Assembly: GCF_902459465.1 (NCBI RefSeq)
Contig: NC_047079.1
Coordinates: 7,316,001-7,380,000 of the forward strand
Source: Asterias rubens
Lineage: Eukaryota
Length of the DNA stretch: 64,000 nucleotides
Direction of reading: 5' to 3'
Shown: one piece after another, positions 16,105 through 43,352 of the stretch
Numbering within the stretch: position 1 is the first letter of the stretch
How the letters are laid out: every line of letters starts with the position of its first letter
Position numbers and translations under genes: made by a program
Notes under the pieces: model-generated
The model's database searches: none
Told to the model about the DNA's origin: nothing
Seen by the model: only the letters and a program-made list of their open reading frames with translations

Positions 16105-19100
16105 ATGGAATCTGCGCGGGAGATAATGTGCTGCACCTGCCTGATAAAAACCAAAAGTTACGGCCGACGAAACAGCGTGGCCCCGCTGGGTTCGGACACC
16201 GAGTTGGGGAACGTTGTCTGCAGGACAGACCTGTCTTCGGAGAGGGGCAAACAGCTCCAGATTGCCCGCCTTAGTGTGGTCTGCGCTCTGGCTTCACTCG
16301 CTCTTATTTTCTCGTCTCTGGTCGATATTCAACACTTCACTAATCTTGAGTTTGCTCTCCGTAAAGCACGTACTCTATTCACGAACCTCACGGGGGATGA
16401 AACGCTCTTGCACTCTTTGCAAGTTGAAAGTGCCATGTCTGGATTCTGGCACAGGTGGAATAGTAACTGTAGGACTAATATGTCTTCAAACCTAACTGAA
16501 ATTTTAACTTTTGAAGCTGGTCTTCGTCAAAGCTATACAAACACTGACCTTGCTTGGAGTACATGTACCTTAACCTATTGTGCCTCTTTAGATTCCATTG
16601 AAACCATTGGGTCGACCATCAATGACATTTTGCAGACGATAAAAGTGCACCGTTCCCGCCCAAACCAAATCTCTTCCGTCTCAGGGGTTGGTTTTTACTA
16701 CAACCTTACCGGTTCGTTAGTAACGGCTGTTTCGAAACTTATAAGTAAATCTGAAGTTGAGAATTCTGGAGTTTTTATTGCAAGTTACGATTCGCTGATG
16801 TTAGCGAAGGATTATTATAGCAGGGACATGTATGGTGGGGCAAGTTTCTACGCAGGAACATCAACTCTGGGATTTGAGTCAACTCTTTCTGTTGGAGATG
16901 CTTTCTTTGCTCATGCAGTTAACATTGATGAGGATATTTTGAACGTCTTTAAAGATGAGTTTAATGGAAATACTACCCGGGAAATTCTTGAAGAGATGTC
17001 TAAGATAAGACAAACGACTGTAGAGAGGACGGGCAAGTGTGATTTTGCAGAAGCCTTAAGGTGGTTGGACACCTCGGCGGAGTTTCTTGTAATCTTGCTT
17101 GAGATCCAGCGCAACCGGAGAGCGCGACTCATCGAACATATCACCCTTGAAATCGAGTCCACGACCCGTCTGCTTGCCTTGGAGTTCGCGGTCACGATCC
17201 TCGTGGTCATCTCGTTCCCTTTGCTTCTTCATTCAGCGTGTAGCATGACCGGGTGGATTCAAGACTATATCAAGAGGCTACAGGGGAAGACGTTAGAGCT
17301 ACAGAGAGAGAAGATGATCGTGGAGGGGCTGCTGTTTCAAATGTTACCCCCGACCGTAGCCAATCAATTACGGAGGAGCAAATCGGTGCCCGCTGAGAGC
17401 TTTGACAGCGTCACAATATTCTTCTCTGACATTGTCGGGTTCACATCCATCTCTGCTCAGATAACACCTATGCAGGTACGGTACCCCACCCCAACCCGCA
17501 CACATTCAAGTGTTTAATAATAGCCCCTAGGCGTGCACGCTCCTTTGCTCCACGCTTGGTCCTGGCAAACAAGGACCTAATTGTTTTCCTTGGAATAGCA
17601 ATCGTGGACCTATTGTCTTTAATGTTATAAGTACTCGGTCTTAATATCGCTACAATTTCACTCAAATAAAGCTTTATGGAACACATACTCTGTGAACATT
17701 TCGTTGTTCCCTCAAGCTTTATGGAACACATACTCTGTGAACATTTCGTTGTTCCCTCTTGGGTGTGCACTGCCGACTAGCGGCACTCACAAAACAGGAA
17801 GTCGCGGGAAGTACTTGGAATTCCAATTGTGCCCGTTTCCTTTAATTTATAATGATTTGGGTTTTAACACGTCAAAGATTAATGTGAATGAAAGTACACT
17901 TCTTGCCACCTGATTTAAAACCCTCAATTGAAGCACCTGTTTAGTCCTAACAGCGGCACTCGTTTTATAGTTTGAATGAGTGTATTTAATGATATTCATG
18001 TTCATGTCTCGTGGTCCAACTCATTCAGCGGGGCTCGAAAGGCAAAATTGTTCCCGAACATGGGGCACCACCCCTTGAATCTAGGACAGTAACGTGCAAA
18101 TATGAAATATACATCAGATAAACTTTTAAGCTTTTAAAAGCCGACTATAAAAGCTCACGGCCCTCACATGTAGGTTACGGTTAATCAAATTTAGCCTAAA
18201 TGAACCACATTATTCGAGGCTAAACCAGTAAAAGCGAGTCGTCGCCCCATTTCCATATTTCACTTAAACTTCTCGAGACATGTTTTAAAGCCTTTTTTAA
18301 ATACGCTTGATGGAACCTGAAGGATATAATCACCTTTTCATCTGGCTAAGCCTGTGCCAGATGCAATTGTGTCCGCCATGCAATACTGTCCGCTCCGGAC
18401 ACCTTTGCATGTGCAATCGTGTCCGAGGCTATGCAAAAACCGTCCGGTGGACATGTGCATGACTGTACATGTATGTGCGCGCGTAAGCGACCGTGCATGC
18501 ACTGAACCTACGTATATGCAGCATGAATATTTACCTTCTTTATGATCGCAACGAATACCCAACGGCCGAACATTTCCCAGCATGTCACTCATGACATGCA
18601 CTTAGCTTGTAAACAAAATGGCGAACGTGTTCTGTCATCGACTAGGGGCGTGTTATACTGCAAGGACGGTTTTGCACGGGGCGGACACAACTGCATATGC
18701 AAATGTGTCCGGGCGGACATAATTGCATTATGCAGCAGCGTCCGGGCGCACACGATTGCATATGCAAAACCGTCCGGCGAACATTATTGCATATGCAATA
18801 ATGTCCTCCGGATAGTATTGCATAGAGGACATAAGTGCATGCGACACCGGATTCTTAGAGCGTGTAGCTATAGAGGGAGAACTAGAGCGACTATCGACGC
18901 AAGAAAACAAACAAGAATTCGACATTCTTGGAGCTCATATGATTACATTAAGAAGTAAAAAGCGTAGGCGACAAGAGATGGCTATAAAATCAATTTTTTT
19001 AAAAATGCGAAGATTACCCCCAACCCGATGTTGTATTGTATCGTTCAAAATACACCAAGCCACAAATTATGCTATTTGTTTTACACTATGTGCCAACCGA

Positions 19101-22100
19101 ATAAAACTCTAACCCCAAACGAACTTCATGACAAAATTGGTTAAAATTAATTTGCCGTTCCGTGAACGGTTATTTTTGACATTTTAATTTAATCGCACTC
19201 CGAGAAACCCTGAATGAATATTTCCCCATCATCCTTTTAAATACATTCTACACAAACAATTCAATGACCTTTGCCTGATACTATCTCTTATTGCTACTTG
19301 ATGATGTTAACAAAATGTGACATTGGGGGACAACAGTTTCAATTTATAGACAATTTGATAATGCCGTATGGTGCCAAACTCTCTTGTTCTATACACCAAT
19401 TCAACTTGATTAAAGCAAAGCATTGCTGAAAAGGAGAAGACAGTATGTTCTCTTTATACCAAGACGAGAGGAAAACACAGTATGAGTCAGGGAACTAAAC
19501 AGACATGACAGTAGGATTTTAAAATATACAAATTGGTTATTAAAAAGGCTTGCGGTAGCACCGTTGGACTTAAAATCTTGCACGTGCAATACTGTCTGTG
19601 CAGCAGCACCGAACATGAATATGAAGTGCATTTTAAATTTCCATCTTCATCTTGGTTTATTTTTTTATATATTTTGTTCTTACTAAAAAGGGGCAACAAC
19701 AAAGTGGATTAATTTGTGTGAAAGTTGCTTCAAAGGGCTGTTCGTTCATAATTGTTTCATTTCTCCTTTCCGTATAATAGTATTCCTTTCTCAAGGGTCA
19801 CTTCAAACACCTCGAAAAACAAATATTGCTCGCCCTTGGAAGTAATTATCCCAAGTTATATACAGTATACTTTATATCTCTTCCGAGATGAACGATTCTA
19901 AAAATTTAATTTAAATTGAGAAATTTGGAAGGAGCAGATGTGATACAGTAGAACGGGTATAATTATTAGATTTGTTGGTAAGATATTAAAGAAGTGTGAG
20001 AAGAATATTTTGTTGGTGCGTCTCGTCGTTCTGTTCTAATCTCATTAAGCAATCGTGTGACATTTTGTAATTATCTCAAACCATTTATATAACCATTTAT
20101 ATTTATTAATTTATTTTATATGCTCTTTTGTTTCAATTTGTTTTGTATTTTTCGTAATTTTCTGTATTTTTGTTTCATATCTTATTTACTTGTTATTATT
20201 ATTGTATCCGGTGGCTGTTTGTTGGGGATGTCTATTTTTTTGGTATTGTTTGTGTTATTTGTTCTTGATTGACTCAGATTTGGTTTTCTGTGGAGCTTTT
20301 TCTGTTTCAATCAAAGCATGTATGAAATACACAGTGCGTTTTTCCCCAATAAAGCAAACATAAATATCTGCAAAATTATTTGAATTGTCCATCTTCTGCG
20401 ACTGCTTTCCTTTTTCTCTGCCTCGTCCTTAACTATTCATGTCTCTTCCTGCCTGACCTCAATCTGTCACGAGAATTCCAGATTACGTGTAGATTGTGTT
20501 CTGTAGTCACTTAAAAAGACTCTGCCACGGTCATGACTGTCGGCAAATGTATCTGAATGCTTTGAGGCTGCCCCCCCCCCCCTCCCAGCCTGAGGGACCT
20601 TGACTTATCTTCAAGACATCAATGCATGTTCTTGGCGTTTTAGTTGATGTTTGAAAGGATCAATGGAATCACTGTGAGTAATGTCCATACACTGACATTT
20701 GCTCATTTACCGTCACAAATTACAGTTTAAATTAGATTTTTTCAAAGTATAAAGACAGTTGTTATGTTAAATGTTTGGGGAAATGTTTTTGTATTGCAAC
20801 CTCATTCATCTGTGTGTGGGTGTTCCTTGTCACCAAATATCAAGTATGCACTGGTCGACTTATTTGTTGTAACAATAGACTGATGTATACAATGGCCGCA
20901 ATGTTTCCATGCCAACTTCACAGACCCAGCTACCATTGCTCTCATTTCGGTACCTTCTTGAGACCACGGGAAAATAAAGGGGGGGGGCTGCATACGGGAA
21001 TTCTAAAGACCGGGCGCTCGACAAGGAATGTTGCGTACACAGTCCATGGGGAAATCTTTAGTATAATGGATAAAAGAAAGAACAAAGATGTCTCCTCATG
21101 AATGCAAAGCGAGAGTGTGCACTTGCTGCTGTGAGATCTTTGCTTGCGACTTCAAGCAAGTCGTTGTACCAGACAATTTTCAAACTGAACTCATAAAGTG
21201 TTTCTTAAAATACTATACAAAATAGTACTGATGTTTTGTATCTTTTATTTCCCATAGGTGGTAGACATGTTGAATCGTTTATACATGTGTTTCGATGGCC
21301 GTATCGACATCTACGATGTATATAAAGTGGAGACGATTGGAGATGCCTACATGGTGGTCAGTGGTTGCCCTCATCTCAACGGGGATAAACATACCGGGGA
21401 GATCGCAACGATGGCCCTAGACCTTCGTAGTGCCATCAAGCAGGTCCAGTTGCCCCATGACCCGGAGAGAAAGCTAGAACTCCGAATCGGTATTCACACT
21501 GGTAAGGATTTCCATTTTTAACGAAAATTCTCAAATTCTGAAAAGGAAAGTCATTATTAAAAGGACCCAATGGAACTAAGGTTTTGGGGGCTATATCCTT
21601 AGATGATTTTGTCAGTTTTTCTTTCTTCTGTAAGAGTTCTATTTTGGTTTATTTTATTTCATTGTTTAACCTCTCGATGCTGTGTATGTATTTGTATGTA
21701 TTCGACCTTCTTGCTGTATTTTTACTCAAATAAATTCAACCAATTGATCAATTTTTACTACTCTTACAACTTTGGACATTCTTTTATTTATGTTATTATT
21801 TTTCTTGTACTGCGTTTGTAATTGGTTTTGCCTCTTGGTTTATAAGAAATAATTATTATCCTGCAGTGTACACCTGTTTGGCTGCAATGCCCCCCTTTGG
21901 TTCGAGTCGTTGTCAGAATATGCTGGCAAGCTTTCCCCCTAGATTGAGGGGGGGGGGGGGGTATTTTGTATTTCTCATAGGTTGTTTTATCCAGTGAGTT
22001 GTGAACGTGTTCAGTTATAGCCTGGGTTATAATTTTCCTCAGTAATTAAGTTTGACAATTTATTTGATCTATCGTTGACATACAAATTCTGTACACAAAG

Positions 22101-25100
22101 AATATACTGCCAGAGTTTTGTCTTGCCCCCATCAAACCAAATCACTTACCCCTGTTGATTGACACCCCTCTATGACATGTGGTATGGTCCAACTTAGGCT
22201 GTCATGGCCTTATATGAGACGACTGGTGTGTACGATGTGATTAAAGCAATGGAAATATTTAAATAATGTCAGCATGACAGGTAGTCACTACAGTGTTTTA
22301 AATATCTATACATAACATTTTGTATAAGTATGTGTATTTATTCTGTTATTTAGGTTAAACAGTAATATAAACTTTATAATTATTTCTGTTGTAATTGTAA
22401 TTTGTTGTTTTGTAAAGCGCATAGAAATGTTAATTCATATTTTGCGCTATATAAATGTAATTTATTATTATCATTATTATTAAAATAAAAATTATTCCCG
22501 AATGATAACAAATCCGGTTTTCCGGAAACACTCACAGCAGGAAAGACACAACAAGATAATGCATTTACCGGATTCTCCAGGAACACCATTAAACAATTCC
22601 TAACTGGTTGAACAAAATGTATTTTTTATTTTTATTTTTGTATTTTTTATAAATTGCTCCCAAAAGAAGAGGAACAAATATCGATCACTAAAACCCCAAA
22701 TCCAGTTTTAATCCAATCAACGTCCTTAGCATTAACCCGTTGAAAAACATCCTTATTAAATACAGTAACCCCAAAAGTTCACATTCAAGAGATTATTGAA
22801 TCAAGTTAAAAGATGGCAATGTGTAGGGTTTCCGGAGTAAAGGGTTGGCCTTTACTAAAATTAAATTTATGGGTTTTATGAAGAGTAGGAATTCCTGCTG
22901 CGGAAACAAGGGGCTATTATACCTCGTAGTTTGTTTCTTACGCTGATTGAATTATTTGTGTGGATCCGTGCGTAACATAAAAGATGCATTATATTGGCAC
23001 CGACGGAAATGTGTGTAATAAACATGTACCGGTATAGTTGAATTTGTTTTATGAAATTGCTTTTCAACCCATTTATGATAAATTTAAAAAAAAATACTAA
23101 ATTAATAATGACAAACTTTATATTTTTTTATAATTTTTAACAATGTTGTTTTGTTTACCCTAGTATTTGTTTAGCTTACTCGCAAAATGTGACGCACATA
23201 ATATTTCAGGATTTTCTCTGAACCTCCTTGAGAATTCAGATTTTCCTTTAAAGCAGTGAAATAGTCATCAATGTGATAAATAAATAGTCCACAATGTGTC
23301 TTAAAGGCAGTGGACACTATTGGTAATTACTCAAAATAATTATTAACATAAAACCTTTCTTTGTGACGAGTAATGGGGAGAGGTTCATGGATAACATTGT
23401 GAGAAACGGCTCCCTCTGAAGTGCCATAGTTTTTGAGAAAGAAGTAATTTTCCACGAATTTTATTTCGAGACCTCAGATTTAGAACTTGAGGTCTCGAAA
23501 TCAACCATCTAAACGCACACAAGTGTGACAAGGGTGTTTTTTTCTTTCATTATTATCTCGCAAGTTCGATGGCCGATTGAGCTGAAATTTTCACAGGTTT
23601 ATTATTTTATGCATATGTTGAGATACACTAACTGTGAAGGCTAGTCTTTGACAATTACCAACAGTGTCCACTGTCTTTAAAGTGTGGTTTTGTTGTTCTT
23701 ATGATACACAGAGTCTGTAAATCACCTGATTTGTAACATCTAAAAGGTTCTGATGGCTCTAGAATATGAGAGAACCCAAGCCCAAAAGCCCTTTTCAGGA
23801 ATTTTCATAAATAATCTTCCAATTTCCTCTTTGTATGTTTTAGGGCCGTGTGTTGCGGGTGTCGTTGGTTCAAAGATGCCTCGATATTGTCTTTTCGGTG
23901 ACACCGTAAATACAGCTTCAAGAATGGAGTCAAACAGTCTACGTAAGTTCATTTATTTTCTTGGAAATAAAAATATATGTTTTTCTATAAACATAATGTT
24001 CGTATTTGGTATTTTTATTTTCGTTTGTTATCTCACGTACACGCCATTTTCAGTCTGTACTATGTTTTTATTTGATATTTTTGAATGTTCGTTTGTTCTA
24101 TTTTTCACGTACGCCATATATTTCGATGTGTATTACTCTACTTGTTACTATGGTGATAATGTGATCTGATGTAGATTAGTTTGAAACATTTTGTTTTCAG
24201 CAAATAAGATCCACGCCAGTGACGTCACATACATGGCCCTGTCCAAAGACAGTTCGTACGAGATGGAAAAGCGAGGAGAAATTAACATCAAGGTGAGACT
24301 GTTTGATAGATCTGTCTTTGGGTGAAAATAAATCACCGTTTTAGGATTCAAACTTTCTTAATGGTCAAGTGAATGCTGCAGAAATCAGTATCTGAAATGC
24401 GCTTAGGTTTCGGAGTTGTTTATAAAAATGCCACAGTGTGATTTTGTCACACAGTTAATCCACACTGATTACATGAATTTATTTAATGGTGAGTTGTGTT
24501 ATGTGTATTGCATCCGATAACAGCTTTCTCATGAAGACATTCAGAGCATACTGATCGAAACGTTGTTTCACACCACGTTGAAGAACCGACACAATTACTC
24601 ATAGAGATATATGTTCATGTACATGGTCTAAAGCGCCAACCTTAGTCGACTATCAATGATCACAGAAACAAAGAGACTCCTCGACAGGTCCGACCTGGGC
24701 TCAATCTCATGGCTCTGCTTACCGCCGAATTCTGCGCTTAGCGATTCCCCGCTTTACGTGTTTCTCCGCTAGTCTTGTAAGCGTAAAATGCCTAGTAGCG
24801 TGAAGTACGCACGCGCAGAAGCCCAAATTCGCCACTAACCCGTGAATTACGCTTGCAGTAAGCACATAATTCCCTGCTTCCGTACGCGCCGATTCTGTGC
24901 TTACGGTAAATAGAGCCATGAAATTGGGCCCATGCTTAGCAAAACTAATAAGCAAAAAAGGGAACCCAGTCAGAGATGGCATGTGTGAGATGTTTTTTTG
25001 AATGATAAACTTGTTTTTGCTTGTTAGCAAAATGTTTCATGCTAAGCTACGTGATTAATAAGCAGTTCATTAAAATGTGGCTTTTAGCATTACTAAAGTT

Positions 25101-26661
25101 TTTAAATTTTGCTTGAAATGTTAATAGGCTTTTTCTCAGCGAGAGATTGTCCGGGTCTATACTTCCCTCATGAGATTATAGGGTGCCATCATTAACGACT
25201 CTTGTTTCTAATTACCAATGATTATTGGAACAACTTGAAGCACCCTTGAGTCGGAGGCTAGTCTCGTTGCAGCTATACTTAGAGCTACGCTGAGACGTTT
25301 GGACAATTATTCTCCACCCTCAGGTGCAGAAATGTCATCAGAGATGGAATGATTAATTCCTTCTCGAGGACACACGGGAAAATGTCTAATAAGAAAAGTC
25401 AACCTTGGTATCTGAATGACGAGCTAATACCTTTTAGAGTCAGTCAGTGCTATAACCAAATAAATTGCTAATAATTTATTTCATTAAAATGAAAAGAGAG
25501 CACAAATTTCAAGTAAATTCCAGTCATATTGATTGAACTGAATTCCATTTCAATACATACATACCTACATTACAATAGAGCATTTGTAAAGCGCCTTTTT
25601 AACCAGATCAAAGCGCTGAAAAAGCAAACTAATGTAACTTTACTATACAACATTATTATACATCTGACACAAATAAAACAATTAAGAGATTTTTTTCAAA
25701 AATGAATCAGTCATGATGGCATCAATTAATTCATTGGTTTCGTTTGATTTGATTTGATTTGATTTGATTTGATTTGATTTGATTTGATTTTGATTTGATT
25801 TGAACGGTACAGTATAAGTGAGTTTAATGCTTGACATCGATTTGAAAATATATGCAAATTGTTTCAATATGTTGTTTTTTCCAGGGAAAGGGTATGATGA
25901 ATACTTACTGGTTGGTCAGCCGTAAAGGATACGGCGAGCAAAATGAAAGCATGGTGTGCCATATTGACTTCGCTAAGATCAGGGCCCAAAAGAAGGCTGC
26001 ACGGGAGGCCAAAAAGAAAGCAGAAGAAGAAAAAGCCAAGAAGAAAGCAGAAGAAGAGGAGGCGAGAATTAAAGAAGAGGAAGCTGAGGCCAAAAAAGAC
26101 GAGGACGAAGCAGGATCTACACAAAAAGCAGAGCAAAATGAGGCCAAGAAAGACGAGGACGAAGCAGGGTCCACACAAAAAGAAGAACTAGCTGAAGCTA
26201 AGAAAGATGAAGAAGCAGAACTCACAATTAAAGAAGTGGTGGCTGTGGCTAAGAAAGACGAAGCAGAGTCCAGAAACAAAGAAGAGGGAGCTGAGACTAC
26301 GCTAGATGAAGAAAAACACAAGTCAACCATTAAAATTCCACAAGACGAGTCCACAAACAACAAAGGAGAGACGACACTTGAAGGCGCTAGTAACATTTCT
26401 CCCTGGACTGAGGCTACAAAAGAAGAAAAAAAATCAGAGTCCATAAATATAGAAAAGGCAGCTGAAGCTACGCTTGATGAAGAAACACACAGGTCAGCCA
26501 CTAAAAATATACCACAAGAGGAGCCTAAAAACATTAAAGGAGAGTCGACACTTGAGGGCGCTAGCATTTCTCCTGTACTTGTTTTCAAACCGGCAGCAAC
26601 GGGCGCGAGTGACCACGTGGAGTCAAAGGCAGCTGATAAAGATAATTCAAATAATAAGTGA
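16105..26661 (+). CDS. Two-TM guanylyl cyclase with an extracellular NIT-like sensor domain (NIT-GC), 860 aa, 5 coding exons
   Basis: Exons 16105-17475, 21258-21501, 23844-23942, 24201-24292 and 25885-26661, all GT-AG with compatible phases, total 2583 nt. TM1 [17 protein letters not shown]; NIT-like [12 protein letters not shown]; TM2 [16 protein letters not shown]; signalling helix [16 protein letters not shown]. Catalytic motifs [53 protein letters not shown] and [11 protein letters not shown]. No kinase-homology domain. Confidence 0.92.
17669..17758. repeat. Perfect 2x45-bp tandem duplication in intron 1 of the cyclase gene
   Basis: AAGCTTTATGGAACACATACTCTGTGAACATTTCGTTGTTCCCTC occurs at 17669 and 17714. 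Confidence 0.9.
18346..18858. mobile_element. Degenerate foldback element rich in TGTCCG/CGGACA/ATGCA sub-repeats
   Basis: The left end ATGCAATTGTGTCCGCCATGCAATACTGTCCG matches the reverse complement of the right end CGGATAGTATTGCATAGAGGACATAAGTGCAT. Confidence 0.6.
22405..22486 (+). mobile_element. CR1/L2-type LINE or SINE 3' tail
   Basis: TGTAAAGCGCATAGA...TTGCGCTATATAAAT followed by an (ATT)n-like tail, the typical 3' end of CR1/L2-clade elements. Confidence 0.55.
23301..23680. mobile_element. Complete Kolobok-like MITE with TTAA at both ends
   Basis: TTAA-AGGCAGTGGACACTATTGGTAATT ... AATTACCAACAGTGTCCACTGTCT-TTAA. Confidence 0.88.
24698..24930. mobile_element. Harbinger-like MITE with a 27-bp TIR
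   Basis: ctg-GGCTCAATCTCATGGCTCTGCTTACCG ... CGGTAAATAGAGCCATGAAATTGGGCC. Confidence 0.75.
25743..25803. repeat. (GATTT)n pentanucleotide microsatellite about 80 bp upstream of the last cyclase exon
   Basis: About 12 near-perfect GATTT units. Confidence 0.95.
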
Positions 26662-28545: not shown

Positions 28546-29991
28546 CTAAATTGCATAAGAGTGGGTGACTTTTGGGCCAATTACGGTGGCGTACTGTGAC
28601 ATCTCGATGCTTTCAAGAGATTTGTTCGGTTTGGCATACAGTGCGTGGATCGACTCCTTGTGAGCGTGCGTGTCCTTGGACTGTTCGGCCGTCCTCCGTG
28701 GCTCAGTCACGGCGTGGCTGGTTGCCCTTGGTGGGGGAACTGCGGGTGGCTTGGGGTTGCAGCGTGGATCTCCAACAGTCATGTACTCTGATATTGTAAT
28801 GCTTCTCTGTGGTCTTGATGTCAAGCGTGTTGAGTTCCCACTCTCCCGTCTGGTAGAGTCTTGGTCCTTGATGGGAATGGCGCCAGACTGACGTCTGTGT
28901 TTGGCGATTTTGTACAGACACAAGACAGAGACCACAATCATGATTAAGACGACCAGAATGACCCCTATGTAGAGATGAAAACTAGTGAAAGTTCCAGGAG
29001 TGTCTTCTTGTTTACAGTTGGTGATATTGAGAGCTTCGCTTGTCGCATTCAGACCGACGGCATTGGATGCAGAGCATGTCACAATGAGAGAGTTGAACGA
29101 CATGCAGTTGTTGATTCTCAGGAATCTTGAAGTAGCATTCCGGCTTACGTCTTGAAACCCACTATCAGAAACATTCCACGATAACCTACTGGTGCCTTCC
29201 TGCACAGTCCAAGAATAGTGCGACATGTCGGGCACAGCTTCTGATCGACACTCTAAGTGGAGCTCGACCATCCCACTTTCGCTGTTGTACTTTTTGTCGA
29301 CAGCGACAGTAACGTACCCAACCCGCACCTTCAATGGAGTAACCGAGCAGTTGGGCCCCCTCGATCCGCCCCAGCCCGCTATGCATACGAAACGTCCATA
29401 GTTATCGCCCCCGCGAAGGCGATGTTTCACACTACTCGTTGAGCCTGGCTCAATCACGCGTGATTCTGCGAGAAGAGCACTCTGAGCGTTAGTTCGGGCC
29501 GAGTACCATGATAGCAGGGTGGGAACTTTAGTGTTATTTGGTACTCTGCACACCAGTGACACGGTATCATTTACATGTGGGGTCGTTGGATTCAAAGTAC
29601 AGATTGGGGTAGGAGGTTGAACAACAGTCAGATGAGCAGAATCAGAAAGTAGTTTTGAAGATGGCGAACATCTGAGGTCACCTCCTTGCTTGGGACGAAC
29701 TTTGAGAAGCAATAGCGTTGAAATACAGTCTTTAAACAAAACTATTACATCTTGTCTAGCATTTGTCTCTCTGTAAGCAATCGTTGTTGTTGGTGTTCCA
29801 TTAGCCTCCGCCTCATAATAATGAATCCAGACTATTCTCTCGCATTTTTTAGTTCGGCATGTGAACGTCGCGTTGCCTCCAACATCGACAGTAACATCAT
29901 TTGGTTGTATAAAAAACACGCCATTTGATGATGAAGTCCCAAGCACGAATATTTGTATGCTACAGATAAGCAGTAAAATGCATAAAGCCAT
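28546..29991 (-). CDS. Intronless type-I Ig-superfamily receptor (3 Ig domains) with an ITIM-like tail, 481 aa
   Basis: One ORF contains the signal peptide, a V-like domain (QPNDVTVDVGGNATFTC..IVW..LRC), two further Ig domains and TM LYIGVILVVLIMIVVSVLCLY. The tail has SEYMTV, ALYAKP and SQYATV. Confidence 0.9.
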   Translation of the reverse strand: MALCILLLICSIQIFVLGTSSSNGVFFIQPNDVTVDVGGNATFTCRTKKCERIVWIHYYEAEANGTPTTTIAYRETNARQDVIVLFKDCISTLLLLKVRPKQGGDLRCSPSSKLLSDSAHLTVVQPPTPICTLNPTTPHVNDTVSLVCRVPNNTKVPTLLSWYSARTNAQSALLAESRVIEPGSTSSVKHRLRGGDNYGRFVCIAGWGGSRGPNCSVTPLKVRVGYVTVAVDKKYNSESGMVELHLECRSEAVPDMSHYSWTVQEGTSRLSWNVSDSGFQDVSRNATSRFLRINNCMSFNSLIVTCSASNAVGLNATSEALNITNCKQEDTPGTFTSFHLYIGVILVVLIMIVVSVLCLYKIAKHRRQSGAIPIKDQDSTRRESGNSTRLTSRPQRSITISEYMTVGDPRCNPKPPAVPPPRATSHAVTEPRRTAEQSKDTHAHKESIHALYAKPNKSLESIEMSQYATVIGPKVTHSYAI

Positions 29992-31271
29992 ATTAATTCA
30001 GTGATTTAATCAATTAAAACAACAACTGAGGCCTTATAGGTAGTGTGGACTCGGATTAAATGGATCAATGTTATTTCAAATTAACTTATTACAACTAAAA
30101 TTGTTGTGCATTGCTCAGTGAAGATGTTTCCCTTTTCGTTTGCATCAATTTCAGTTTTACATTCGATGTGACTTATTTCAATATTGTTATATGATTATTT
30201 AAATTTTGTTTCCTTTTACAAGAGTGCACTTTGATGTTACACCTATAAATTAACAACCTTGGCAAAATAGCGAAAGAGAAATAGTTTATAGAATGTGTCA
30301 ATTAAAAGCTGAAACAAAAAAAACAAGTTAAACAAAACATTGAATTACTTGTAAAAAAGTAGGTCTACTCTAGGCCTGTGGATCTTGGCACGTTTGATGC
30401 TGAAGTACCGATCAAAATACAGCATCTCTTACAGACGGGGTTAACCACAAATTGACCAAAGTCTGGCGATAAAAACTTTCTAATTGGGAAGCAGCAATTA
30501 GCTAAATGAGTTGGTTACATCACTTTGGTAGAATTGGAGCAATACCCGGGATCCTGCCTAATATTGACAATTCTGACAAATTTCATCATGAAGAAACGCA
30601 CAATTTGATTAACTTGCAACTTGTTATGAACGTCATCTAAAAATTTGCAAAAACCCAAGAACTATCCAATCTCCATTAAGGTGTACGTGGCCGGTGGGGG
30701 CGCCCTGCCCTTCTCTCCTTCCAGCCAAAACTATACCCATATTTGGGAAAATATTCATGTTCATAAAGGTGCAGTAGTAATTATATTAGTGTGGGAACAA
30801 AACTGCCTGTGACCGAAAATAAAACTTATTACAGAGTTTGGTCTCGTAAAAAGAAACGGTATTTCCCGTTTCCTGGTTGCAGCTAAAGTGTGTGAACAAC
30901 TCGTACTACTCCCGTGAAACTGCTGGTTCTCAAGAGCGAACAAAGCAACCTCTTTCGATTTTGGAATCACTCAATTGTTTAGATAGTGGTTGGATACAAC
31001 AACACTTATATGTAAAAATCTCGTTATAAAAGGTGAGATATCGCTGAAGATCAGGAGCAAATGCAAAAGGGAAACTCCCTGAAAGGACACACAATCTGAG
31101 AAGCGTTACAGCAGTATCGCTTCTCGGATTCAAACTTTGGGCATAAATCTGATATATTTTAGGTAACTTCAAAGTGAAGCATTTCTCAAAATGCTTTGTA
31201 AAATCAAAGGCTGCTGTAGGCTTCTAACCCGTCATTATATCTTTTTGAATTACCGAACGTATACATTCCCT

Positions 31272-31560
31272 CTAAAGGCATGGGCACTATTGGTAACTAT
31301 TCAAAGTAATTGTTAGCATACAAACTGACTTGGTAACGAGCAATGGAGAGCTGTTGATAGTATAAAACATTGTAAGAAAGGACCCCTCTGAAGTAACGTA
31401 GTTTTCGAGAAAGAAGTAATTTCTCAGAAATATTTGAAATGAATTCGAGACCTCGAGTTCAAGAATCTGAAAGCACACACAGCTAATATGCGACAATGGT
31501 GTTTTTTCTTCCACTCAACTCTCTTAACCTAGACGACGAATTGTTCAGCTCGTGTTTACT
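31272..31560. mobile_element. Kolobok-like MITE, one-ended
   Basis: CTAA-AGGCATGGGCACTATTGGTAA, followed by the family body (CCCTCTGAAGTAACGTAGTTTTCGAGAAAGAAGTAAT). Confidence 0.7.
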
Positions 31561-33091
31561 GCCATGTGACGAGTCACGGGTTGAGTATTATTGCATAAAC
31601 AGTTATTCAACAATAATAATGTTTGCAACAGGCGGATATTACATTGTTTTTATTCTGTTGTTTTGTGTGTGTGTGGGGGGGGGGTCTTGGAGCGTCGCAA
31701 ACAACCATACTAATCCTATACACTTACCGGTAAACACGTTACACGTTACCGGTAAACTATAGGTCATGACGTTATATAGTGAAAACAATGAGAGAAGCAG
31801 GTTGGGTTTTGTCGTGGATTTTGTGCACGGTCATAAAAGGTGCACGAACCGTTACCAAGCTAATCAGCGTGGTAACGGTAATTTTCACAAGAATGACCAT
31901 GCTGCTGCCTCTATAAATAACTTTGATTGAGAACATATAAGAGTTAAGAACTTCACGGCCAAGTTAAAAGTGTAAATTTTAAAAAGTGTCTTCTAAAAAA
32001 GTCATATGATTTTGTTGTCAGTCATTATATTTTGTTAAGCTGTCAAATCAATTCGATACACACTCGTTTTCATTCTATGTTATTAGCGAGCTTGCTTATT
32101 TACAGCCTTTAATACTGATTATTTTATAAAAGTTCAGATATCTTCACCTGACATTACTAATCTATAAACATTGCAATAATGTCTAGTTTTGGACAATAAC
32201 TAACATGATCGTCTATGTGGAAATCGGTTTTTCTTTTGTGATGTCTAGATTTTTTTTCTCTTCTTTTCTGCTTCCATTCCTTCTTGGTTTTTCCCCGTTT
32301 TTTGCAGCTTTTTCCCCCCTTTTTCTGTATAATAAACGCAAGCATATTGTAGTAATGTTAAATGCATCGCACCATCAGGATATCAAATTGCCAAGCAACA
32401 AGGAATAATTGCAAAAATACGATATCAAAACTCATAGTAAAATGTTATAAGCGAGGCGAAAATTAAGGGTTGTTGTATCAACCTTTACTGTTGGATAAAT
32501 ACAATGATTTGAAGAAGAAAGTTCCAATTAAAGTAAACTTTGTGTAAAACAGTTACGTTCGGTTGCAGTGGTTACATAAGTATAACAGCTCTTACAAATG
32601 CATGGTTATAAAACTAGCTTAAATGTACAAAAGGTATAACTTTCCTTTCAGGATTGCATATAGACCAAAACATTTAAAACAATGTGTCTTGTGGAACTGA
32701 AATATCCATAGTTAAAATGTACAAATTTATATTCCGATATTTTATAGTATGTATATATAGACGATGGTGGTACAAATACACGCCAATTGAGAAACCAAAA
32801 CACTCTATAAAAAGTATGATTTAAAAATATATTGAATTCCGTTCTATTCATGGTTTGCAAAGATACTACAGCATTTAGACAGATGTTTTTTAGAACAATT
32901 TGCTCAGTAAAAAAGTCACATTTTTACAAAACATTATACCCTCCTCTTCAAATGGCGGCATTTAAGCCATATACAGATGTTATGATTTTATAACATTATA
33001 TGCCGCATACGATTACTATTTTTCAAATAACATTCCTTTCTTTTTATACATTAGGCCGTTACAAGTGCAGCCAAGTCAAATATATGAACCG

Positions 33092-33209
33092 GCCCAGTTC
33101 AAACTTCCTGCGAATGCGATGCAGACGCTGTTTGTCTTAATGTGACGCAAGAAACTTCAAATCGCGTTCGCAGGAGGCTAGGCGCAATCGCAGGAAGTAT
33201 AAACCGGGC
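33092..33209. mobile_element. Short MITE with a ~27-bp TIR
   Basis: GCCCAGTTCAAACTTCCTGCGAATGCG ... CGCAATCGCAGGAAGTATAAACCGGGC. Confidence 0.7.
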
Positions 33210-33566
33210 TAACGCTGTTAAAAACAAATGTGTTCAAATAATAATTATAGTACTTTATACTCAGTTATGACACAATGCATACAAAATATACAAATTTTTA
33301 GTAAAATAGAGGTAACAAAATATCAAGTAGAAAGTTTACAAACTGTTGTTATAAAGTCTTGTTTATATCTTGTATTCAAATCTTGCATATAAAAAGGGCA
33401 AAATCAAGGTACAAATGATTTCCCATCGTTTTCTGAAATAGATAGGCCTAATGCGCCAGTGCGCTTCTCCGTGTTTTTTTTTTTTCTTCTTTTTTTCTTC
33501 TTTTTTTCTTCTTCTTTTTTTTCTTTCTTTTAATTCTTTTAAAGATATAGCTTTCTTTTAACTCTC

Positions 33567-33754
33567 TTAAAGGGAAGGTACACTATTGGTAATTGTCAAA
33601 GACCAGTCTTCTCACTTGGTGTGTCTCAACATATGCAAAATATAACAAACTAATGAAAGAAAAAACACCCTTGTCACACGAAGTTGTGTGCTTTCAGATA
33701 GGAATAAAAGACTTCTAGCTAGAAGTCTTTTATTATTTTAGTGAGAAATTACCT
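33567..33754. mobile_element. Truncated Kolobok-like MITE ending about 18 bp from the stop codon of the Ig gene at 33772
   Basis: TTAA-AGGGAAGGTACACTATTGGTAATTGTCAAAGAC..., with body sequence shared with the copies at 13105 and 46173. Confidence 0.7.
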
Positions 33755-33771
33755 GTATTACAAAATCTATG

Positions 33772-35655
33772 CTACATGGTCTTGTAGGAGATGGTTTCGT
33801 AAGTTTCAAAGTCATCAATCTCTCGAGCCTCGTCGGATTGATCAAGCTGACAAGAGGACCCGCCAAGTCCAACCTCTCCAACTGTCATGTAACTTGGTAG
33901 AGTAATAGGCACCCTGGCTTCATTACTCCCGGTGGTTGGTGTAACACGCGCTGTAAGCTTACTCTTTAGAAGCTGGTTTTTCAATGGGACTTTTGGTTTG
34001 GTAGGCCTAGGGTTAGAAGGCTTGATTCTTACCGAGTCGAGACTGCCGCCAGGGTTGACTTTTTCAGGGTCAGGATTGGCTGGGTGGGATGTCTCCTTTG
34101 TTGTTGAGCTCACTGCATGCTTTAGGGGGTGCTGTACATCAGGGGAAGGGGGCGCACCGATTAAATGATAGTCGGGTACTTGGAGTGGATTGGTATCCTC
34201 AACCTGAACTGAAGCTTCGACCTCTGGGTGCTTAACATCAGTGGAAGACTCGCAGCAAGCCCCATGGTCGGTCACGACTGGGAGTGGACGGCTGGTAGCC
34301 CCTATCTGTACTGGGGGTGGACGGCTGGTAGCCCCAATCTGTACTGGCGCTTCAACCCGGGATACAGTAACCGTGGTCGTGTCGCTATCTACTGCGGTAC
34401 CTACTGTGGTGTTCTCAATCGGGCTGTAGTGATTCGGACTTGGGTCAACGCTTGCCTGATTGGTCTGCTCTATGTCATCGTTACTTGACATGGTGTGAGG
34501 AGCAACACTAGTGGTGGGTCTGTAAATCTTCCTGTTCCTCCTGATGACTACAATGATGATTATGGTTACCAAAATGAGAGCTGATACAACGATGATGATT
34601 ATGAGCGCGATTGGGATAACCCAAGCTCCATTGGTCTTACCGGTGCGATTGCACTCTTCAATGTTCCCTGCCACAAAACGGCCGTCGGTACATTGCAATA
34701 TAGTCACTGGTTCACTCATCTTGCTCATACCGATGTCATTATGAGCTGTGCACCTCACCTGTAGACCAGCATCTCTCTCTGTGATGTTGTACACGATGAG
34801 CATATTCGATGTCAACTCAAAACCTCTTCGACTTTCGTTGCGAACATCCACCCAAGTTTGATCTGAGTCGTTCTGGAAGCTGGTATCGACGGCCCAGTCG
34901 AACTCCGTTGCCTCAGGAACCGCCTCCGCATCACATTCTAATCTTAGAGAAAAATTTTGAGAGTCAAAACCGAGAAAATTTACGGTAACGATCATGTCAA
35001 TTTGGAGGGGTGTCACTGTGCAGTTTGGTCCCTCTGTTGGCTGACCGGCAACACATATAAACTTCTTGTAGTTGTCTGTCTCTTTCAATACTAACTGTAC
35101 GGTGTGTGATGAACCAGGCTCGACGTTGCGTGTTATATTTGGGGTTATACGCCATGTTAGTTTAGTTGAAACAACACTCTCTACTGGAACTTTGCAGCTC
35201 AAAGAAACTTTGTCTCCTACCACAGTGTTTTTGGATGAAGTTGAACACATTGGAGTTGGTGGATTCACTACCTGCAAATGTGCACAGTTTGAAAAGTTAT
35301 TTTTGTCTGTATTAAGCCAACACGCGTACATCCCAGCGTCACCAAGTTGTACATTGCTTATTTGGAACTGACTGGATTTGTTCTGAAACAAGATGGAGAA
35401 CCGAGTGGTATCCACACCAGGATTCAAAGTTGGTGCAAGGCACGTCCCAATAGTCAAATAAGAACCACTGTCGCAACCTGACTTCGAATATACCCAGGAA
35501 ACACCGCCACACTCGTAGTCTTGGTTGAAGACGCACTTAAATGTTGCAACGCCCCCAACGGCAACCGTAACATTTTCTGGATCTGCCAAGAAAATGATAG
35601 CTCCTATAAACGACACCTTTAAGCAGCAGAGGATAAAGACAACCGCTGTTTCCAT
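33772..35655 (-). CDS. Intronless type-I Ig receptor, paralogue A (V-like + 2 Ig domains + TM + long Pro/Ser/Thr tail with YxxPhi motifs)
   Basis: The ORF extends to 35721, but paralogues start at MET (35655). Signal peptide METAVVFILCCLKVSFIGA; D1 FKC..SW..DAGMYAC; TM AWVIPIALIIIIVVSALILVTIIIIVVI; tail YSPI, YHLI, YMTV, YETI and YKTM. Confidence 0.9.
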   Translation of the reverse strand: METAVVFILCCLKVSFIGAIIFLADPENVTVAVGGVATFKCVFNQDYECGGVSWVYSKSGCDSGSYLTIGTCLAPTLNPGVDTTRFSILFQNKSSQFQISNVQLGDAGMYACWLNTDKNNFSNCAHLQVVNPPTPMCSTSSKNTVVGDKVSLSCKVPVESVVSTKLTWRITPNITRNVEPGSSHTVQLVLKETDNYKKFICVAGQPTEGPNCTVTPLQIDMIVTVNFLGFDSQNFSLRLECDAEAVPEATEFDWAVDTSFQNDSDQTWVDVRNESRRGFELTSNMLIVYNITERDAGLQVRCTAHNDIGMSKMSEPVTILQCTDGRFVAGNIEECNRTGKTNGAWVIPIALIIIIVVSALILVTIIIIVVIRRNRKIYRPTTSVAPHTMSSNDDIEQTNQASVDPSPNHYSPIENTTVGTAVDSDTTTVTVSRVEAPVQIGATSRPPPVQIGATSRPLPVVTDHGACCESSTDVKHPEVEASVQVEDTNPLQVPDYHLIGAPPSPDVQHPLKHAVSSTTKETSHPANPDPEKVNPGGSLDSVRIKPSNPRPTKPKVPLKNQLLKSKLTARVTPTTGSNEARVPITLPSYMTVGEVGLGGSSCQLDQSDEAREIDDFETYETISYKTM

Positions 35656-36241
35656 TTTAGTAGTGATCGAGTTGACGGCTGCAGCTATAATGACCGAATT
35701 GCTTGCAACATTGTTGTCCATTATATACCAGCTTTATTTGTACACGCCATCGGGAGGTCGTTTCCTGCTTACTGATTATCACTTTCGATATGACAGGGCT
35801 TCATCATTTTCTGCCCTACTTTTTACCGCTCCCTTTTCACATCTTGTTATTTCTCTTCTTCCCTTCCCCTTCTTTCATTTTCTTTAATTTTTCTTTTTCT
35901 ATAAATAGTAAACTTTGTTTTGCTTTCAGTCATCAGAGAATCACATACTGATTTTTGTTATGAACCTATTCGATTTGATTTTCATTTTCTGTATTTTTTG
36001 TTGGTCTCCCTCATTACCAATTCTTCTTCATCTTCTTTTTTCTTTCTATTCTCCGTCAAGTAGAAATTTTTCATGCTATGTATCTATTTATTTTACTTAT
36101 TTATAGAAAGCTGAAAATGATGGTTTTAACAGATCTGATTTTCGGGTCACAGCTGGAAATTCGTTTGATACAAATTTTGTGTGAGTCCGAACAGAGACAA
36201 TCCCTCAGATTGTTTCGTCGCTCATTGTTTGTTATGAATAT

Positions 36242-39200: not shown

Positions 39201-39280
39201 TCTGGATCTGCCAAGAAAATGATAGCTCCTATAAACGACACCTTTAAGCAGCAGAGGATAAAGATAAGCGCTGTTTCCAT
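36242..39280 (-). pseudogene. Ig receptor paralogue B, split by a 1.46-kb transposon insertion in Ig domain 2
   Basis: The 5' ORF 39280-38666 (signal, D1, D2 up to EADNY) and the 3' part 37242-36242 (KKFICVAG...D3, TM, tail) join into a colinear paralogue once 37243-38699 is removed. Confidence 0.88.
37243..38699. mobile_element. Non-autonomous Tc1/mariner (pogo/Tigger-like) element
   Basis: TIRs (T/C)AGTCGACTCCCGTTATAACGAG and CTCGTAATAACGGGAGTCGACTG, followed by TA at 38700-38701. The intact paralogue reads CTTCTTG-TA-GTTGTC at this site. Subterminal CCTCGTTATA repeats are present. No transposase ORF was seen. Confidence 0.85.
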
Positions 39281-39871
39281 TTTAGTAGTTACCGAGTTGA
39301 AAGCAGCAGCTATAATGAACGAATTGCTTATTGACCATTATATATACCAGCTATATATTTGTTCATGCCATCGCGGGAGGTCGTTTCCTGCTTACTGATT
39401 ATCACTTTCGATATTACGGGGCTTCGCCATATTATTTCTGTCCTACTTTACCGCTCCCTTTTCACATATTTCTCTTCCTTTCCTTCCCCTTCTTTCATTT
39501 TCTTTAATTTTTCTTTTTCTATAAAAAGTATTGCTTTGCTTTCAGTCTTCAAGAATCACATACTGATTTTTGTTATGAACTCTTAAGATTTGATTTCCAT
39601 TTTCTTTCTTTTTTTCGTCTCCCTTTTTTCCTAATTCTTCTTCATCTTCTTTTTTTCTTTCTATTCCTCGTCAAGTAGATATTTTTCTGTTTACCTATTA
39701 ATTTTGTTAACTTAATTTTTGTATAAAAAGCTGATGAGTAATGATGATTTTGACAGATTTGATAGTCGGCTCACAGCTGGAGATTCGATTGAAATGAATT
39801 GTTGTCTGAGTCCAGACTAGACAGAGACAACCCCTCTATTCGTTTCGTCACTAATTGTTTGTTATGAATAT

Positions 39872-41503: not shown

Positions 41504-41862
41504 TTTAGTAGTGATCGAGTTGATAACAACAGCTATACTGACGGCTCAGTGCCAATTCCCACACCAACTAAATTGAACCGTTCAAAGGTAAATTCTTCCG
41601 TCCCTGGCTTTCATTTTCGTTTTTTAAATATTTATTTCCTTTTGGAAATTTACCTTTTTGTGTCTGTTGCCATAGCGGGCGCAAAATTAACTGGCTCTGG
41701 GGAATCTTTATCAAAAGCAGCCTTTTGGCGTAAGTATGTTTTGCTCAGGAACCCGGCTAATTTGCATGTTGGCGAAGCAAGCAGTGACAGAGTGTTTGCA
41801 TGCCTTAGACTTTTATTAGAACTGCAAAATGTAAAAATCAAGACGTGAACAGGAATAGGCTG

Positions 41863-42114
41863 CTATAGGTCCGGTGCGAGAGGAGATGTCTCTCTGTAAA
41901 CGGTCGTTGATGTTGAGGTTCCATTGGCCTCCGCCTCATAGTAACGAATCCAGACTATTCTCTCGCATGTTTGCGTCCGGCATGTGAACGTCGCGTTGCC
42001 TCCAACTTCGACAGTAACATCATTCGGTTGTATAGAAAACACGCCATTTGATGATGAAGGCCCAAGTACGAATATTTGGATGCCACAGATAAGCAGTAAA
42101 ATGCATAAAGCCAT
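41863..42114 (-). pseudogene. 5'-only fragment of a duplicate of the 28546-29991 Ig gene
   Basis: MALCILLLICGIQIFVLG...YYEAEANGT is nearly identical to the N-terminus of the 481-aa gene. Homology stops at about 41887 and the ORF ends in unrelated sequence (SPLAPDL). Confidence 0.85.
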
Positions 42115-43280: not shown

Positions 43281-43352
43281 TGCCAAGAAAATGCTAGCTC
43301 CTGTAAACGACACATTTAAGCAGCAGAGGATAAAGAAAACCGCTGTTTCCAT
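43281..43352 (-). pseudogene. Signal-peptide-only fragment of a MET-type Ig paralogue
   Basis: METAVFFILCCLNVSFTGASIFLA, then an abrupt switch at about 43275 into sequence homologous to 31092 and below. Confidence 0.8.

What the first reader, a model, noticed from the sequence alone, without database searches (positions are those of the whole stretch)
16105..26661. NIT-domain membrane guanylyl cyclase, a non-canonical candidate sensor for NO, nitrite or nitrate
The architecture is TM - helical extracellular domain - TM - signalling helix - cyclase, with no kinase-homology domain and no H-NOX domain. The cyclase retains both catalytic Asp residues, the GTP-specifying Glu (KVET) and Cys (RYCLF), and the N...R pair, so it should be an active GC. 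The extracellular segment resembles the bacterial-type NIT domain (Pfam NIT; H.LQ.E motif). Established: NIT-GCs mediate NO feedback in Platynereis photoreceptors and are absent from vertebrates. Their function in echinoderms is, to my knowledge, unstudied.
Basis: partly seen in the sequence, partly recalled or inferred. Interest (0 to 1): 0.72.

Follow-up and report, generated by a model that had tools for sequence, protein, structure and literature searches.

The report
Starfish NIT-type guanylyl cyclase, arginine-less sensor
This is a real, expressed starfish gene for a membrane enzyme that makes cGMP and carries a diverged bacterial-type NIT sensor outside the cell, but the sensor has lost both arginines that NIT domains need to respond to nitrate or nitrite, and its closest relatives appear to include an unnamed receptor family in vertebrates.

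Summary
Window 16105-26661 (+) is an intact five-exon gene for an 860-residue protein. Its layout is cytoplasmic N-terminus, TM1, 279-residue helical ectodomain, TM2, signalling helix, GTP-type cyclase and a Glu/Lys-rich tail. A spliced transcript contig joins exons 2 to 5 exactly at the modelled junctions.

The NIT reading is partly right.
- Pfam's NIT model does not hit the ectodomain.
- Profile-profile comparison with eight Pfam-positive animal NIT domains gives 99% probability (E 6e-18).
- The predicted fold matches only NasR, the one solved NIT structure the fold searches returned (Z 23.2; next best 10.2).

The two arginines whose mutation abolishes the nitrate response of NasR are Arg in 117/117 and 114/117 canonical animal NIT proteins. 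Here they are Ser109 and Met242. A canonical nitrate/nitrite pocket is therefore unlikely, and the ligand is unknown.

The gene is single-copy and sits in a clade with other starfish and sea-urchin genes. An AU test rejects grouping that clade with the kinase-homology receptor cyclases (p 0.005). Its apparent sister group (support 92/80) is a large unnamed family of about 700-residue vertebrate cyclases whose ectodomain model also best matches NasR (Z 13.1).

NIT cyclases in echinoderms were already published in 2006, 2020 and 2023. This scan also noted a canonical paralogue on the same chromosome.

The parts
16105..17475 (+). Exon 1 (residues 1-457): N-terminus, TM1, ectodomain, TM2, signalling helix and start of the cyclase domain
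   Evidence: Open frame from the ATG; GT donor after 17475; tblastn with Patiria orthologue P0003
16165..16176 (+). Conserved cytoplasmic R21-R22-N23-S24 motif. It fits the R-R-x-S consensus of PKA/PKG-type sites; that reading is an inference only
   Evidence: R21, N23 and S24 are invariant in four asteroid sequences; RRNS/RRSS in sea urchins; residues checked
16270..16329 (+). TM1 (about residues 56-75)
   Evidence: Kyte-Doolittle windows above 2.0
16330..17166 (+). Ectodomain (residues 76-354): divergent NIT-fold double helical bundle with 5 N-glycosylation sequons and 4 Cys
   Evidence: hhalign against canonical NIT, probability 99%, E 5.9e-18; AF2 pLDDT 82.5; NasR 4akk at Foldseek TM 0.71 and VIA Z 23.2; sequons and Cys
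16429..16431 (+). Ser109, at the position of the first invariant NIT arginine (NasR R50, motif LQxER)
   Evidence: role of NasR R50 from PMC9581486
16828..16830 (+). Met242, at the position of the second invariant NIT arginine (NasR R176, motif xERAxG)
   Evidence: PMC9581486 and PMC7496416
17167..17238 (+). TM2 (about residues 355-378)
   Evidence: Hydropathy up to 2.47
17239..17385 (+). Juxtamembrane motif (S-M-T-x-W-I-x-D-Y) and signalling helix
   Evidence: Pfam HNOBA tail at residues 387-422; motif shared with sea-urchin, Lingula and vertebrate relatives
21258..21501 (+). Exon 2: cyclase core with E482 and D486
   Evidence: Pfam Guanylate_cyc 3.3e-23; spliced contig of run X2
23844..23942 (+). 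Exon 3: cyclase segment with R552, C554, N561 and R565
   Evidence: Pfam 7.5e-13; spliced contig; residues
24201..24292 (+). Exon 4: cyclase C-terminal part
   Evidence: Weak Pfam match, E 0.024 and below the cut-off; tblastn; spliced contig
25885..26661 (+). Exon 5: end of the cyclase domain and, from 25999, a 220-residue Glu/Lys/Ala-rich repetitive tail, then the stop codon
   Evidence: tandem repeats of period 27-171; transcript contigs and a 27-nt length variant after 26032

Best explanation
The region is an intact, transcribed, single-copy gene for an 860-residue receptor-type guanylyl cyclase. Shown: the exon structure, two TM segments, an ectodomain homologous to NIT in sequence profile and in predicted fold, a signalling helix, and a class III cyclase domain carrying every residue used by GTP-specific homodimeric cyclases. 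There is no kinase-homology domain and no H-NOX domain. Inferred mechanism: as in other two-TM helical-bundle sensors and NIT cyclases, the protein acts as a dimer. A change in the extracellular double four-helix bundle would be passed through TM2 and the signalling helix to the paired catalytic domains and would set the rate of cGMP synthesis. What differs from canonical NIT cyclases is the pocket. Both arginines that NIT domains need for the nitrate/nitrite response are replaced, by Ser109 and Met242. The first is lost in every member of this echinoderm clade. I therefore read it as a NIT-derived sensor with changed ligand specificity: not a canonical nitrate/nitrite binder, ligand unknown. 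The conserved cytoplasmic RRNS motif and the long acidic tail may add intracellular regulation (inference).
For: Gene model and splicing. Domains. Catalytic residues. NIT homology: a 49%-identical relative (P0002) passes Pfam NIT at 27.1 bits against a cut-off of 24.9. A profile of the clade's ectodomain, searched against 1.84 billion proteins, finds beyond starfish only four proteins, all with strong Pfam NIT hits of 80-97 bits. hhalign gives 99% probability, E 5.9e-18 over 236 columns. The AF2 model has pLDDT 82.5. NasR is the only significant Foldseek hit and scores VIA Z 23.2 against a next best of 10.2. Lost arginines: (0 of 6 and 2 of 6 Arg in the clade, against 117/117 and 114/117 in canonical proteins). 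Functional weight of those residues: PMC9581486, PMC7496416 and PMC7400543. Clade: starfish and sea urchins together at 98/89; sea-urchin ectodomains are homologous to the starfish ones (95%, E 4e-8) and to NIT (92%, E 6e-7). Single copy in the genome.
Against: No ligand was tested. The role of the arginines is shown only for bacterial NasR. Whether the NO-responsive Platynereis NIT-GC1 uses them is unknown, because I could not obtain its sequence. A basic residue two positions before Met242 (R240; K in Patiria and P0002) is conserved in starfish and might partly compensate. The window's fold model was built from an alignment that included canonical NIT domains. The tool returned no coordinates for the model, so I could not inspect the pocket geometry.
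Confidence: 0.7

Rival explanations
1. It is a working sensor of NO, nitrite or nitrate, like Platynereis NIT-GC1. The NIT-fold ectodomain would still bind a nitrogen oxide through residues other than the canonical arginine pair.
For: NIT homology and fold; H.LQ.E motif kept; Platynereis NIT-GC1 needs its NIT domain to respond to an NO donor (bioRxiv 10.1101/2023.08.02.551600); R240 lies near the lost second arginine.
Against: Both arginines needed for the NasR response are absent, while they are kept in 117/117 and 114/117 canonical animal NIT proteins. Pfam NIT gives no hit at E<=10.
Confidence: 0.18
2. The ectodomain no longer binds any ligand. The protein would be a membrane-anchored cyclase controlled from inside the cell by phosphorylation of the N-terminal RRNS motif, by partners of the acidic tail, or by Ca-sensor proteins, much as retinal cyclases are controlled intracellularly.
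For: Loss of the pocket arginines. The ectodomain diverges fast (31% identity to Patiria) while the Patiria cyclase region matches the window's exons at 79-87%. The RRNS motif is conserved.
Against: The ectodomain keeps a confident NIT fold and clade-specific conserved residues from starfish to sea urchins, which argues for continued selection on an extracellular function. Nothing here tests phosphorylation or partners.
Confidence: 0.12
3. It is a peptide-receptor-type guanylyl cyclase (natriuretic-peptide or sperm-chemoattractant receptor class).
For: The best solved match of the catalytic region is human GC-A. Automatic names of relatives often say 'atrial natriuretic peptide receptor'.
Against: There is no ANF-receptor ectodomain and no kinase-homology domain. 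Forcing the clade together with the kinase-homology cyclases costs 27.7 log-likelihood units, AU p 0.0047.
Confidence: 0.01

Closest known systems
Animal NIT-domain guanylyl cyclases (NIT-GCs; Anantharaman et al. 2006 PMC1592074; Moroz et al. 2020 PMC7400543; Platynereis NIT-GC1/2, bioRxiv 10.1101/2023.08.02.551600)
   Same: Both have two TM segments around a roughly 250-280-residue helical ectodomain homologous to NIT, a signalling helix, and a GTP-type cyclase without a kinase-homology domain. Both share the N-terminal C-x..GK-x-x-Q motif before TM1, and both encode the whole sensor in one large first exon.
   Different: Pfam NIT does not recognise this ectodomain. Both invariant pocket arginines are replaced. 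It forms a separate clade from the main NIT-GC group. It also has a 220-residue acidic repetitive tail.
NasR NIT domain of Klebsiella oxytoca (PDB 4AKK)
   Same: Same predicted fold of two four-helix bundles: VIA Z 23.2, rmsd 3.1 A, 254 residues aligned. The LQxE part of the first motif is kept.
   Different: About 15% identity. NasR R50 and R176, needed for the nitrate response (PMC9581486), correspond to Ser109 and Met242. The output domain here is a cyclase, not ANTAR.
Unnamed vertebrate two-TM guanylyl cyclases of about 700-750 residues (for example gar P0071, sturgeon P0059, turtle P0129)
   Same: Same architecture and the same juxtamembrane M-T-x-W-I-x-x-Y motif. They are 66-70% identical to the Patiria orthologue in the catalytic region and are sister to the echinoderm clade at 92/80. 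Their ectodomain model also best matches NasR.
   Different: No significant sequence similarity between the ectodomains. The vertebrate ectodomains are Cys-rich. In the one gene checked (gar), the large sensor exon ends at a different point.
Kinase-homology receptor guanylyl cyclases (GC-A to GC-G and echinoderm sperm receptors)
   Same: Signalling helix and catalytic domain, with identical catalytic motifs.
   Different: Those have one TM segment, an ANF-receptor ectodomain and a kinase-homology domain. None of these is present here.

Membership tests
Animal NIT-domain guanylyl cyclases | Ectodomain flanked by two TM segments, followed by a signalling helix and a class III cyclase, with no kinase-homology domain | tested here: met
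Animal NIT-domain guanylyl cyclases | Pfam NIT (PF08376) match at or above the gathering score | tested here: not met
   No hit at E<=10 on exon 1 or at this locus in the six-frame genome search. The 49%-identical relative P0002 passes at 27.1 bits.
Animal NIT-domain guanylyl cyclases | Ectodomain homologous to NIT by profile comparison | tested here: met
   hhalign probability 99.0%, E 5.9e-18, 236 columns. Distant hits of the clade profile are all Pfam-NIT proteins.
Animal NIT-domain guanylyl cyclases | NIT fold (two four-helix bundles, as in NasR) | tested here: met
   Foldseek 4akk E 1.9e-4, TM 0.71; VIA Z 23.2 against a next best of 10.2. This is a predicted model, not a solved structure.
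Animal NIT-domain guanylyl cyclases | The two invariant pocket arginines (NasR R50 and R176) | tested here: not met
   Ser109 and Met242, against Arg in 117/117 and 114/117 canonical proteins
Animal NIT-domain guanylyl cyclases | cGMP production dependent on NO, nitrite or nitrate | not testable with these tools
   Needs a cell assay
GTP-specific homodimeric class III cyclases | Two metal-binding Asp, Glu and Cys for guanine specificity, and the transition-state Asn and Arg | tested here: met
   D442, D486, E482, C554, R552, N561, R565. The Patiria orthologue's motifs align with GC-A.
Kinase-homology (peptide-receptor) guanylyl cyclases | Kinase-homology domain and placement in that clade | tested here: not met
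   No kinase-homology exon in the window; AU test p 0.0047
Soluble guanylyl cyclases | H-NOX haem domain | tested here: not met
   Only the last 36 positions of the HNOBA model (the signalling helix) match

The most novel reading that the evidence does not exclude
The gene marks an unrecognised, old subfamily of NIT-derived receptor guanylyl cyclases with a remodelled pocket that has lost the first ligand arginine. The subfamily would be present in starfish, sea urchins and probably a brachiopod, and would survive in vertebrates from fish to reptiles, birds and a marsupial as a large family of unnamed cyclases of about 700 residues. If so, vertebrates did not lose NIT-type cyclases, and these proteins would sense something other than nitrate or nitrite through the canonical arginine pair.
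Probability: 0.5. Interest if true: 0.8.

Novelty: new variant of a known kind. Interest (0 to 1): 0.55.

Why it matters
NIT cyclases are the only proposed non-haem route from nitrogen oxides to cGMP in animals, and only one, in an annelid, has been tested. This gene shows that not every cyclase with a NIT fold keeps the residues that make a NIT domain respond to nitrate. Assigning the function by domain name alone would be wrong here. It also offers a natural comparison inside one animal: canonical paralogues with the arginines against this gene without them. The possible kinship with an uncharacterised vertebrate receptor family would open a new class of vertebrate cGMP receptors to study, if it is confirmed.

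Tried and rejected
- Direct Pfam NIT scan of exon 1 and a six-frame genome scan with PF08376: no hit at this locus.
- Profile of the clade ectodomain against PDB sequences: nothing.
- First tree of 161 catalytic columns: backbone unresolved. Replaced by a 235-column tree.
- P0013 as a kinase-homology outgroup: rejected because it is a multi-cyclase chimera.
- Vertebrate ectodomain profile against canonical NIT (probability 2%, E 0.023), against the starfish clade and against sea urchins: not significant. The Lingula ectodomain against NIT was weak. The vertebrate link therefore rests on fold, architecture and the intracellular tree only.
- Gar gene structure: a large sensor exon exists, but its 3' boundary differs from the starfish gene, so intron positions give no support.
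- Reciprocal search of the starfish genome with the gar protein: the window gene is best for the core exon (69%) but not for the first exon, so the result is equivocal.
- Rfam on the two high-depth intron repeats: no family.
- The supplement of the Platynereis paper, which lists sequences, is not held, so I could not check whether this gene or NIT-GC1's arginines were already tabulated.
- The look-up of sequencing runs was busy twice before answering.
- The tool returned no model coordinates, so pocket geometry could not be measured.
Full report
**Gene and expression**

The region holds one plus-strand gene. tblastn with the full-length Patiria miniata relative P0003, plus inspection of the junctions, gives five exons: 16105-17475, 21258-21501, 23844-23942, 24201-24292 and 25885-26661. 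Every intron is GT..AG. The CDS is 2583 nt and encodes 860 residues ending in TGA.

One Logan contig of run X2 (1355 nt, depth 60) lies on 21256-21500, 23843-23942, 24201-24290 and 25883-26145 without a break in the contig. The mRNA is therefore spliced as modelled. RNA run X5 covers the exons at 1-7x and leaves the unique intron bins at or near zero.

The genome is 417.6 Mb in 150 contigs, and the window is C19:7316001-7380000. The best protein hit is an Asterias amurensis entry: 94% identical over the queried region, 96% over the whole of exon 1. Another note of this scan names the species as Asterias rubens. The gene is single-copy in this genome.

**Architecture**

Hydropathy gives TM1 at about residues 56-75 and TM2 at about 355-378. 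Residues 76-354 lie between them and carry five N-x-S/T sequons and four cysteines, which fits an extracellular location.

Pfam finds Guanylate_cyc on exons 1 to 4. Its only HNOBA match is to the last 36 positions of that model, which is the signalling helix. The window has no kinase-homology exon.

The catalytic residues are D442, E482, D486, R552, C554, N561 and R565.

The last 220 residues are a Glu/Lys/Ala-rich tail built from tandem repeats. The X2 transcript carries one extra 27-nt unit there.

**Is the ectodomain a NIT domain?**

Pfam NIT gives no hit at E<=10 on exon 1. A six-frame search of the whole genome with PF08376 finds seven matches over the cut-off (nine in all, at six or seven other loci), but none at this gene. 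More sensitive tests say otherwise:
- A 49%-identical relative (P0002) passes the Pfam threshold, 27.1 bits against 24.9.
- A profile of four starfish ectodomains, run against 1.84 billion proteins, finds only six proteins. The four outside starfish (lancelet, acorn worm, scallop and one unnamed) all carry strong Pfam NIT domains of 80-97 bits.
- Profile-profile comparison with eight canonical animal NIT domains gives probability 99.0%, E 5.9e-18 over 236 columns.
- An AlphaFold model (pLDDT 82.5, pTM 0.85, ten helices) has one significant Foldseek match in the PDB, NasR 4AKK, at TM 0.71.
- In an all-against-representatives structural search, NasR scores Z 23.2 (rmsd 3.1 A, 254 of 279 residues). 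The next chain scores 10.2.

The ectodomain is a diverged NIT domain. One caveat: the alignment used for the model included canonical NIT sequences.

**The ligand pocket**

In NasR, alanine substitutions of R50 and R176 abolish the nitrate response. The primers in that paper show that these are the arginines of the two NIT motifs, LQxER and xERAxG (PMC9581486). E175 and R176 are placed in the predicted nitrate pocket (PMC7496416). Moroz et al. point to two conserved arginines at the bundle interface of animal NIT domains (PMC7400543).

I aligned 119 Pfam-positive animal NIT proteins. The first site is Arg in 117 of 117 aligned sequences and the second in 114 of 117.

| Sequence | First site (NasR R50) | Second site (NasR R176) |
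|---|---|---|
| Canonical animal NIT proteins | Arg in 117/117 | Arg in 114/117 |
| Window gene | Ser109 | Met242 |
| A. amurensis (P0001) | Ser | Met |
| Patiria (P0003) | Ala | Arg |
| P0002 | Gly | Arg |
| Two sea urchins | Gly | Met |

The first arginine is thus lost across this whole clade, and the second is lost in Asterias and in the sea urchins. A canonical nitrate/nitrite pocket is therefore unlikely.

Whether NO sensing by Platynereis NIT-GC1 depends on these residues is unknown. I could not get that sequence.

**Relatives**

Seven of the genome's other NIT-type cyclase genes were fetched and their catalytic exons assembled; three of them lie on the same chromosome as this gene.

A search with the catalytic region of the Patiria orthologue returns, after starfish, sea-urchin proteins at 73-77% identity, a Lingula protein at 71%, and more than a hundred vertebrate proteins at 66-70%. 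The vertebrate hits come from fishes, reptiles, a duck and a koala, and are mostly 550-770 residues long. Their precomputed Pfam annotation lists only the cyclase domain and, in most, the HNOBA tail. Their automatic names are inconsistent. They have the same layout as this gene and share the juxtamembrane M-T-x-W-I-x-x-Y motif after TM2 and a C-R..L-S-S..G motif before TM1.

I built a maximum-likelihood tree of 235 columns (signalling helix plus cyclase) from 49 rows, rooted on two soluble-type starfish cyclases.

| Grouping | Support (ultrafast bootstrap / SH-aLRT) |
|---|---|
| Window gene with other starfish and sea urchins | 98/89 |
| That clade with the vertebrate family | 92/80 |
| Both with Lingula | 94/91 |

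This group is apart from the main canonical NIT clade and from the kinase-homology clade. Forcing the echinoderm clade together with the kinase-homology cyclases is rejected (delta lnL 27.7, AU p 0.0047). Forcing it together with the main NIT clade, leaving the vertebrates outside, gives p 0.0275. Sea-urchin ectodomains are homologous to the starfish ones (95%, E 4e-8) and to NIT (92%, E 6e-7).

**The vertebrate family**

Sequence profiles do not link the vertebrate ectodomains to NIT or to the echinoderm ones. A model built from vertebrate sequences only (pLDDT 72.9) gives these results:
- Its top Foldseek PDB hit is NasR, but not significantly (probability 0.90, E 0.49).
- Its top structural match among 48,161 chains is NasR, at Z 13.1 with 226 residues aligned. 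The next is Z 9.0 with 117 residues. The tool warns that Z near 13 can occur by chance for helical bundles.
- Against AlphaFold DB clusters, after its own family it matches full-length N-terminal sensor domains of bacterial chemoreceptors and kinases. Several are named nitrate/nitrite sensing. Invertebrate guanylyl cyclases also match (probability about 1.0, E 4e-3 to 0.2).

In the MAFFT alignment, the sturgeon motif L-Q-Q-E-R sits exactly on the starfish L-Q-V-E-S.

I rate it about even that these vertebrate proteins are NIT-derived relatives of this gene. Intron positions and a reciprocal search gave no extra support.

**What is known already**

NIT-type cyclases in insects and sea urchins were described in 2006 (PMC1592074). 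Their spread across animals, echinoderms included, and their supposed loss in vertebrates were described in 2020 (PMC7400543). NO-dependent activity of one annelid member was shown in 2023. This scan has already followed up a canonical paralogue on the same chromosome and judged it an ordinary member.

What is new here is that this gene belongs to a Pfam-invisible subfamily that has lost the pocket arginines, and that this subfamily may extend to vertebrates. My paper searches found no description of either point. Those searches cover open-access papers only.

**Verdict**

The gene is a new variant of a known kind. The mechanism of signal transfer is inferred from the family, and the ligand is unknown.

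Noticed in passing
proteins P0020-P0130 (for example P0071 gar, P0059 sturgeon, P0129 turtle, P0077 duck, P0097 koala); locus L030: A large vertebrate family of two-TM guanylyl cyclases, mostly 550-770 residues, with no kinase-homology domain, no consistent name and no Pfam hit on the ectodomain. Their ectodomain model best matches the NasR NIT domain (Z 13.1) and NIT-type bacterial sensors in AlphaFold DB. No eutherian sequence was among the 120 best hits.
   Followed up: partly
window 23224-23775 and 24512-25063 (introns 2 and 4): Two intronic stretches have very high depth in all four runs, up to thousands of reads per bin in the RNA runs, with many loose ends and internal joints. They are probably copies of high-copy transcribed repeats. 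No Rfam family matches.
   Followed up: partly
window 26032: The transcript contig of run X2 carries a 27-nt insertion here, one more repeat unit in the Glu/Lys-rich tail. This suggests length polymorphism or a difference between species.
   Followed up: no
G000 C19:407800-417799, C19:9287300-9296300, C19:9303800-9310400, C4:11607000-11616000, C10:13222000-13231000, C14:11147000-11152500, C14:15047000-15052000 (L010-L016): At least seven other NIT-type cyclase genes lie in the same genome, three on the window's chromosome. The four with strong Pfam NIT matches (L001-L004) keep both arginines (LQxER and xERxxG). One, on C14 at about 15.05 Mb, has a degenerate catalytic motif (FCDLVGF, and NAETLGGTF in place of KVETIGDAY).
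   Followed up: partly
P0001 (Asterias amurensis) and P0004 (Acanthaster planci): Public gene models of the orthologues look faulty. P0001 is exon 1 read through into the intron (468 residues, no cyclase core). P0004 lacks about 75 residues from the middle of the ectodomain.
   Followed up: no
window 28546-45524 (- strand) and 48130-49407 (+): A cluster of long single-exon ORFs for membrane proteins with shared N-terminal sequences lies downstream. Other notes of this scan describe them as immunoglobulin-like receptor paralogues. An ORF at 4990-5571 looks like a C-type lectin from its translation alone. None was examined here.
   Followed up: no
P0013: A metagenome-derived 966-residue protein contains four partial cyclase-domain copies. 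It is a likely assembly or prediction chimera, and its high bit score in the homology search is misleading.
   Followed up: yes
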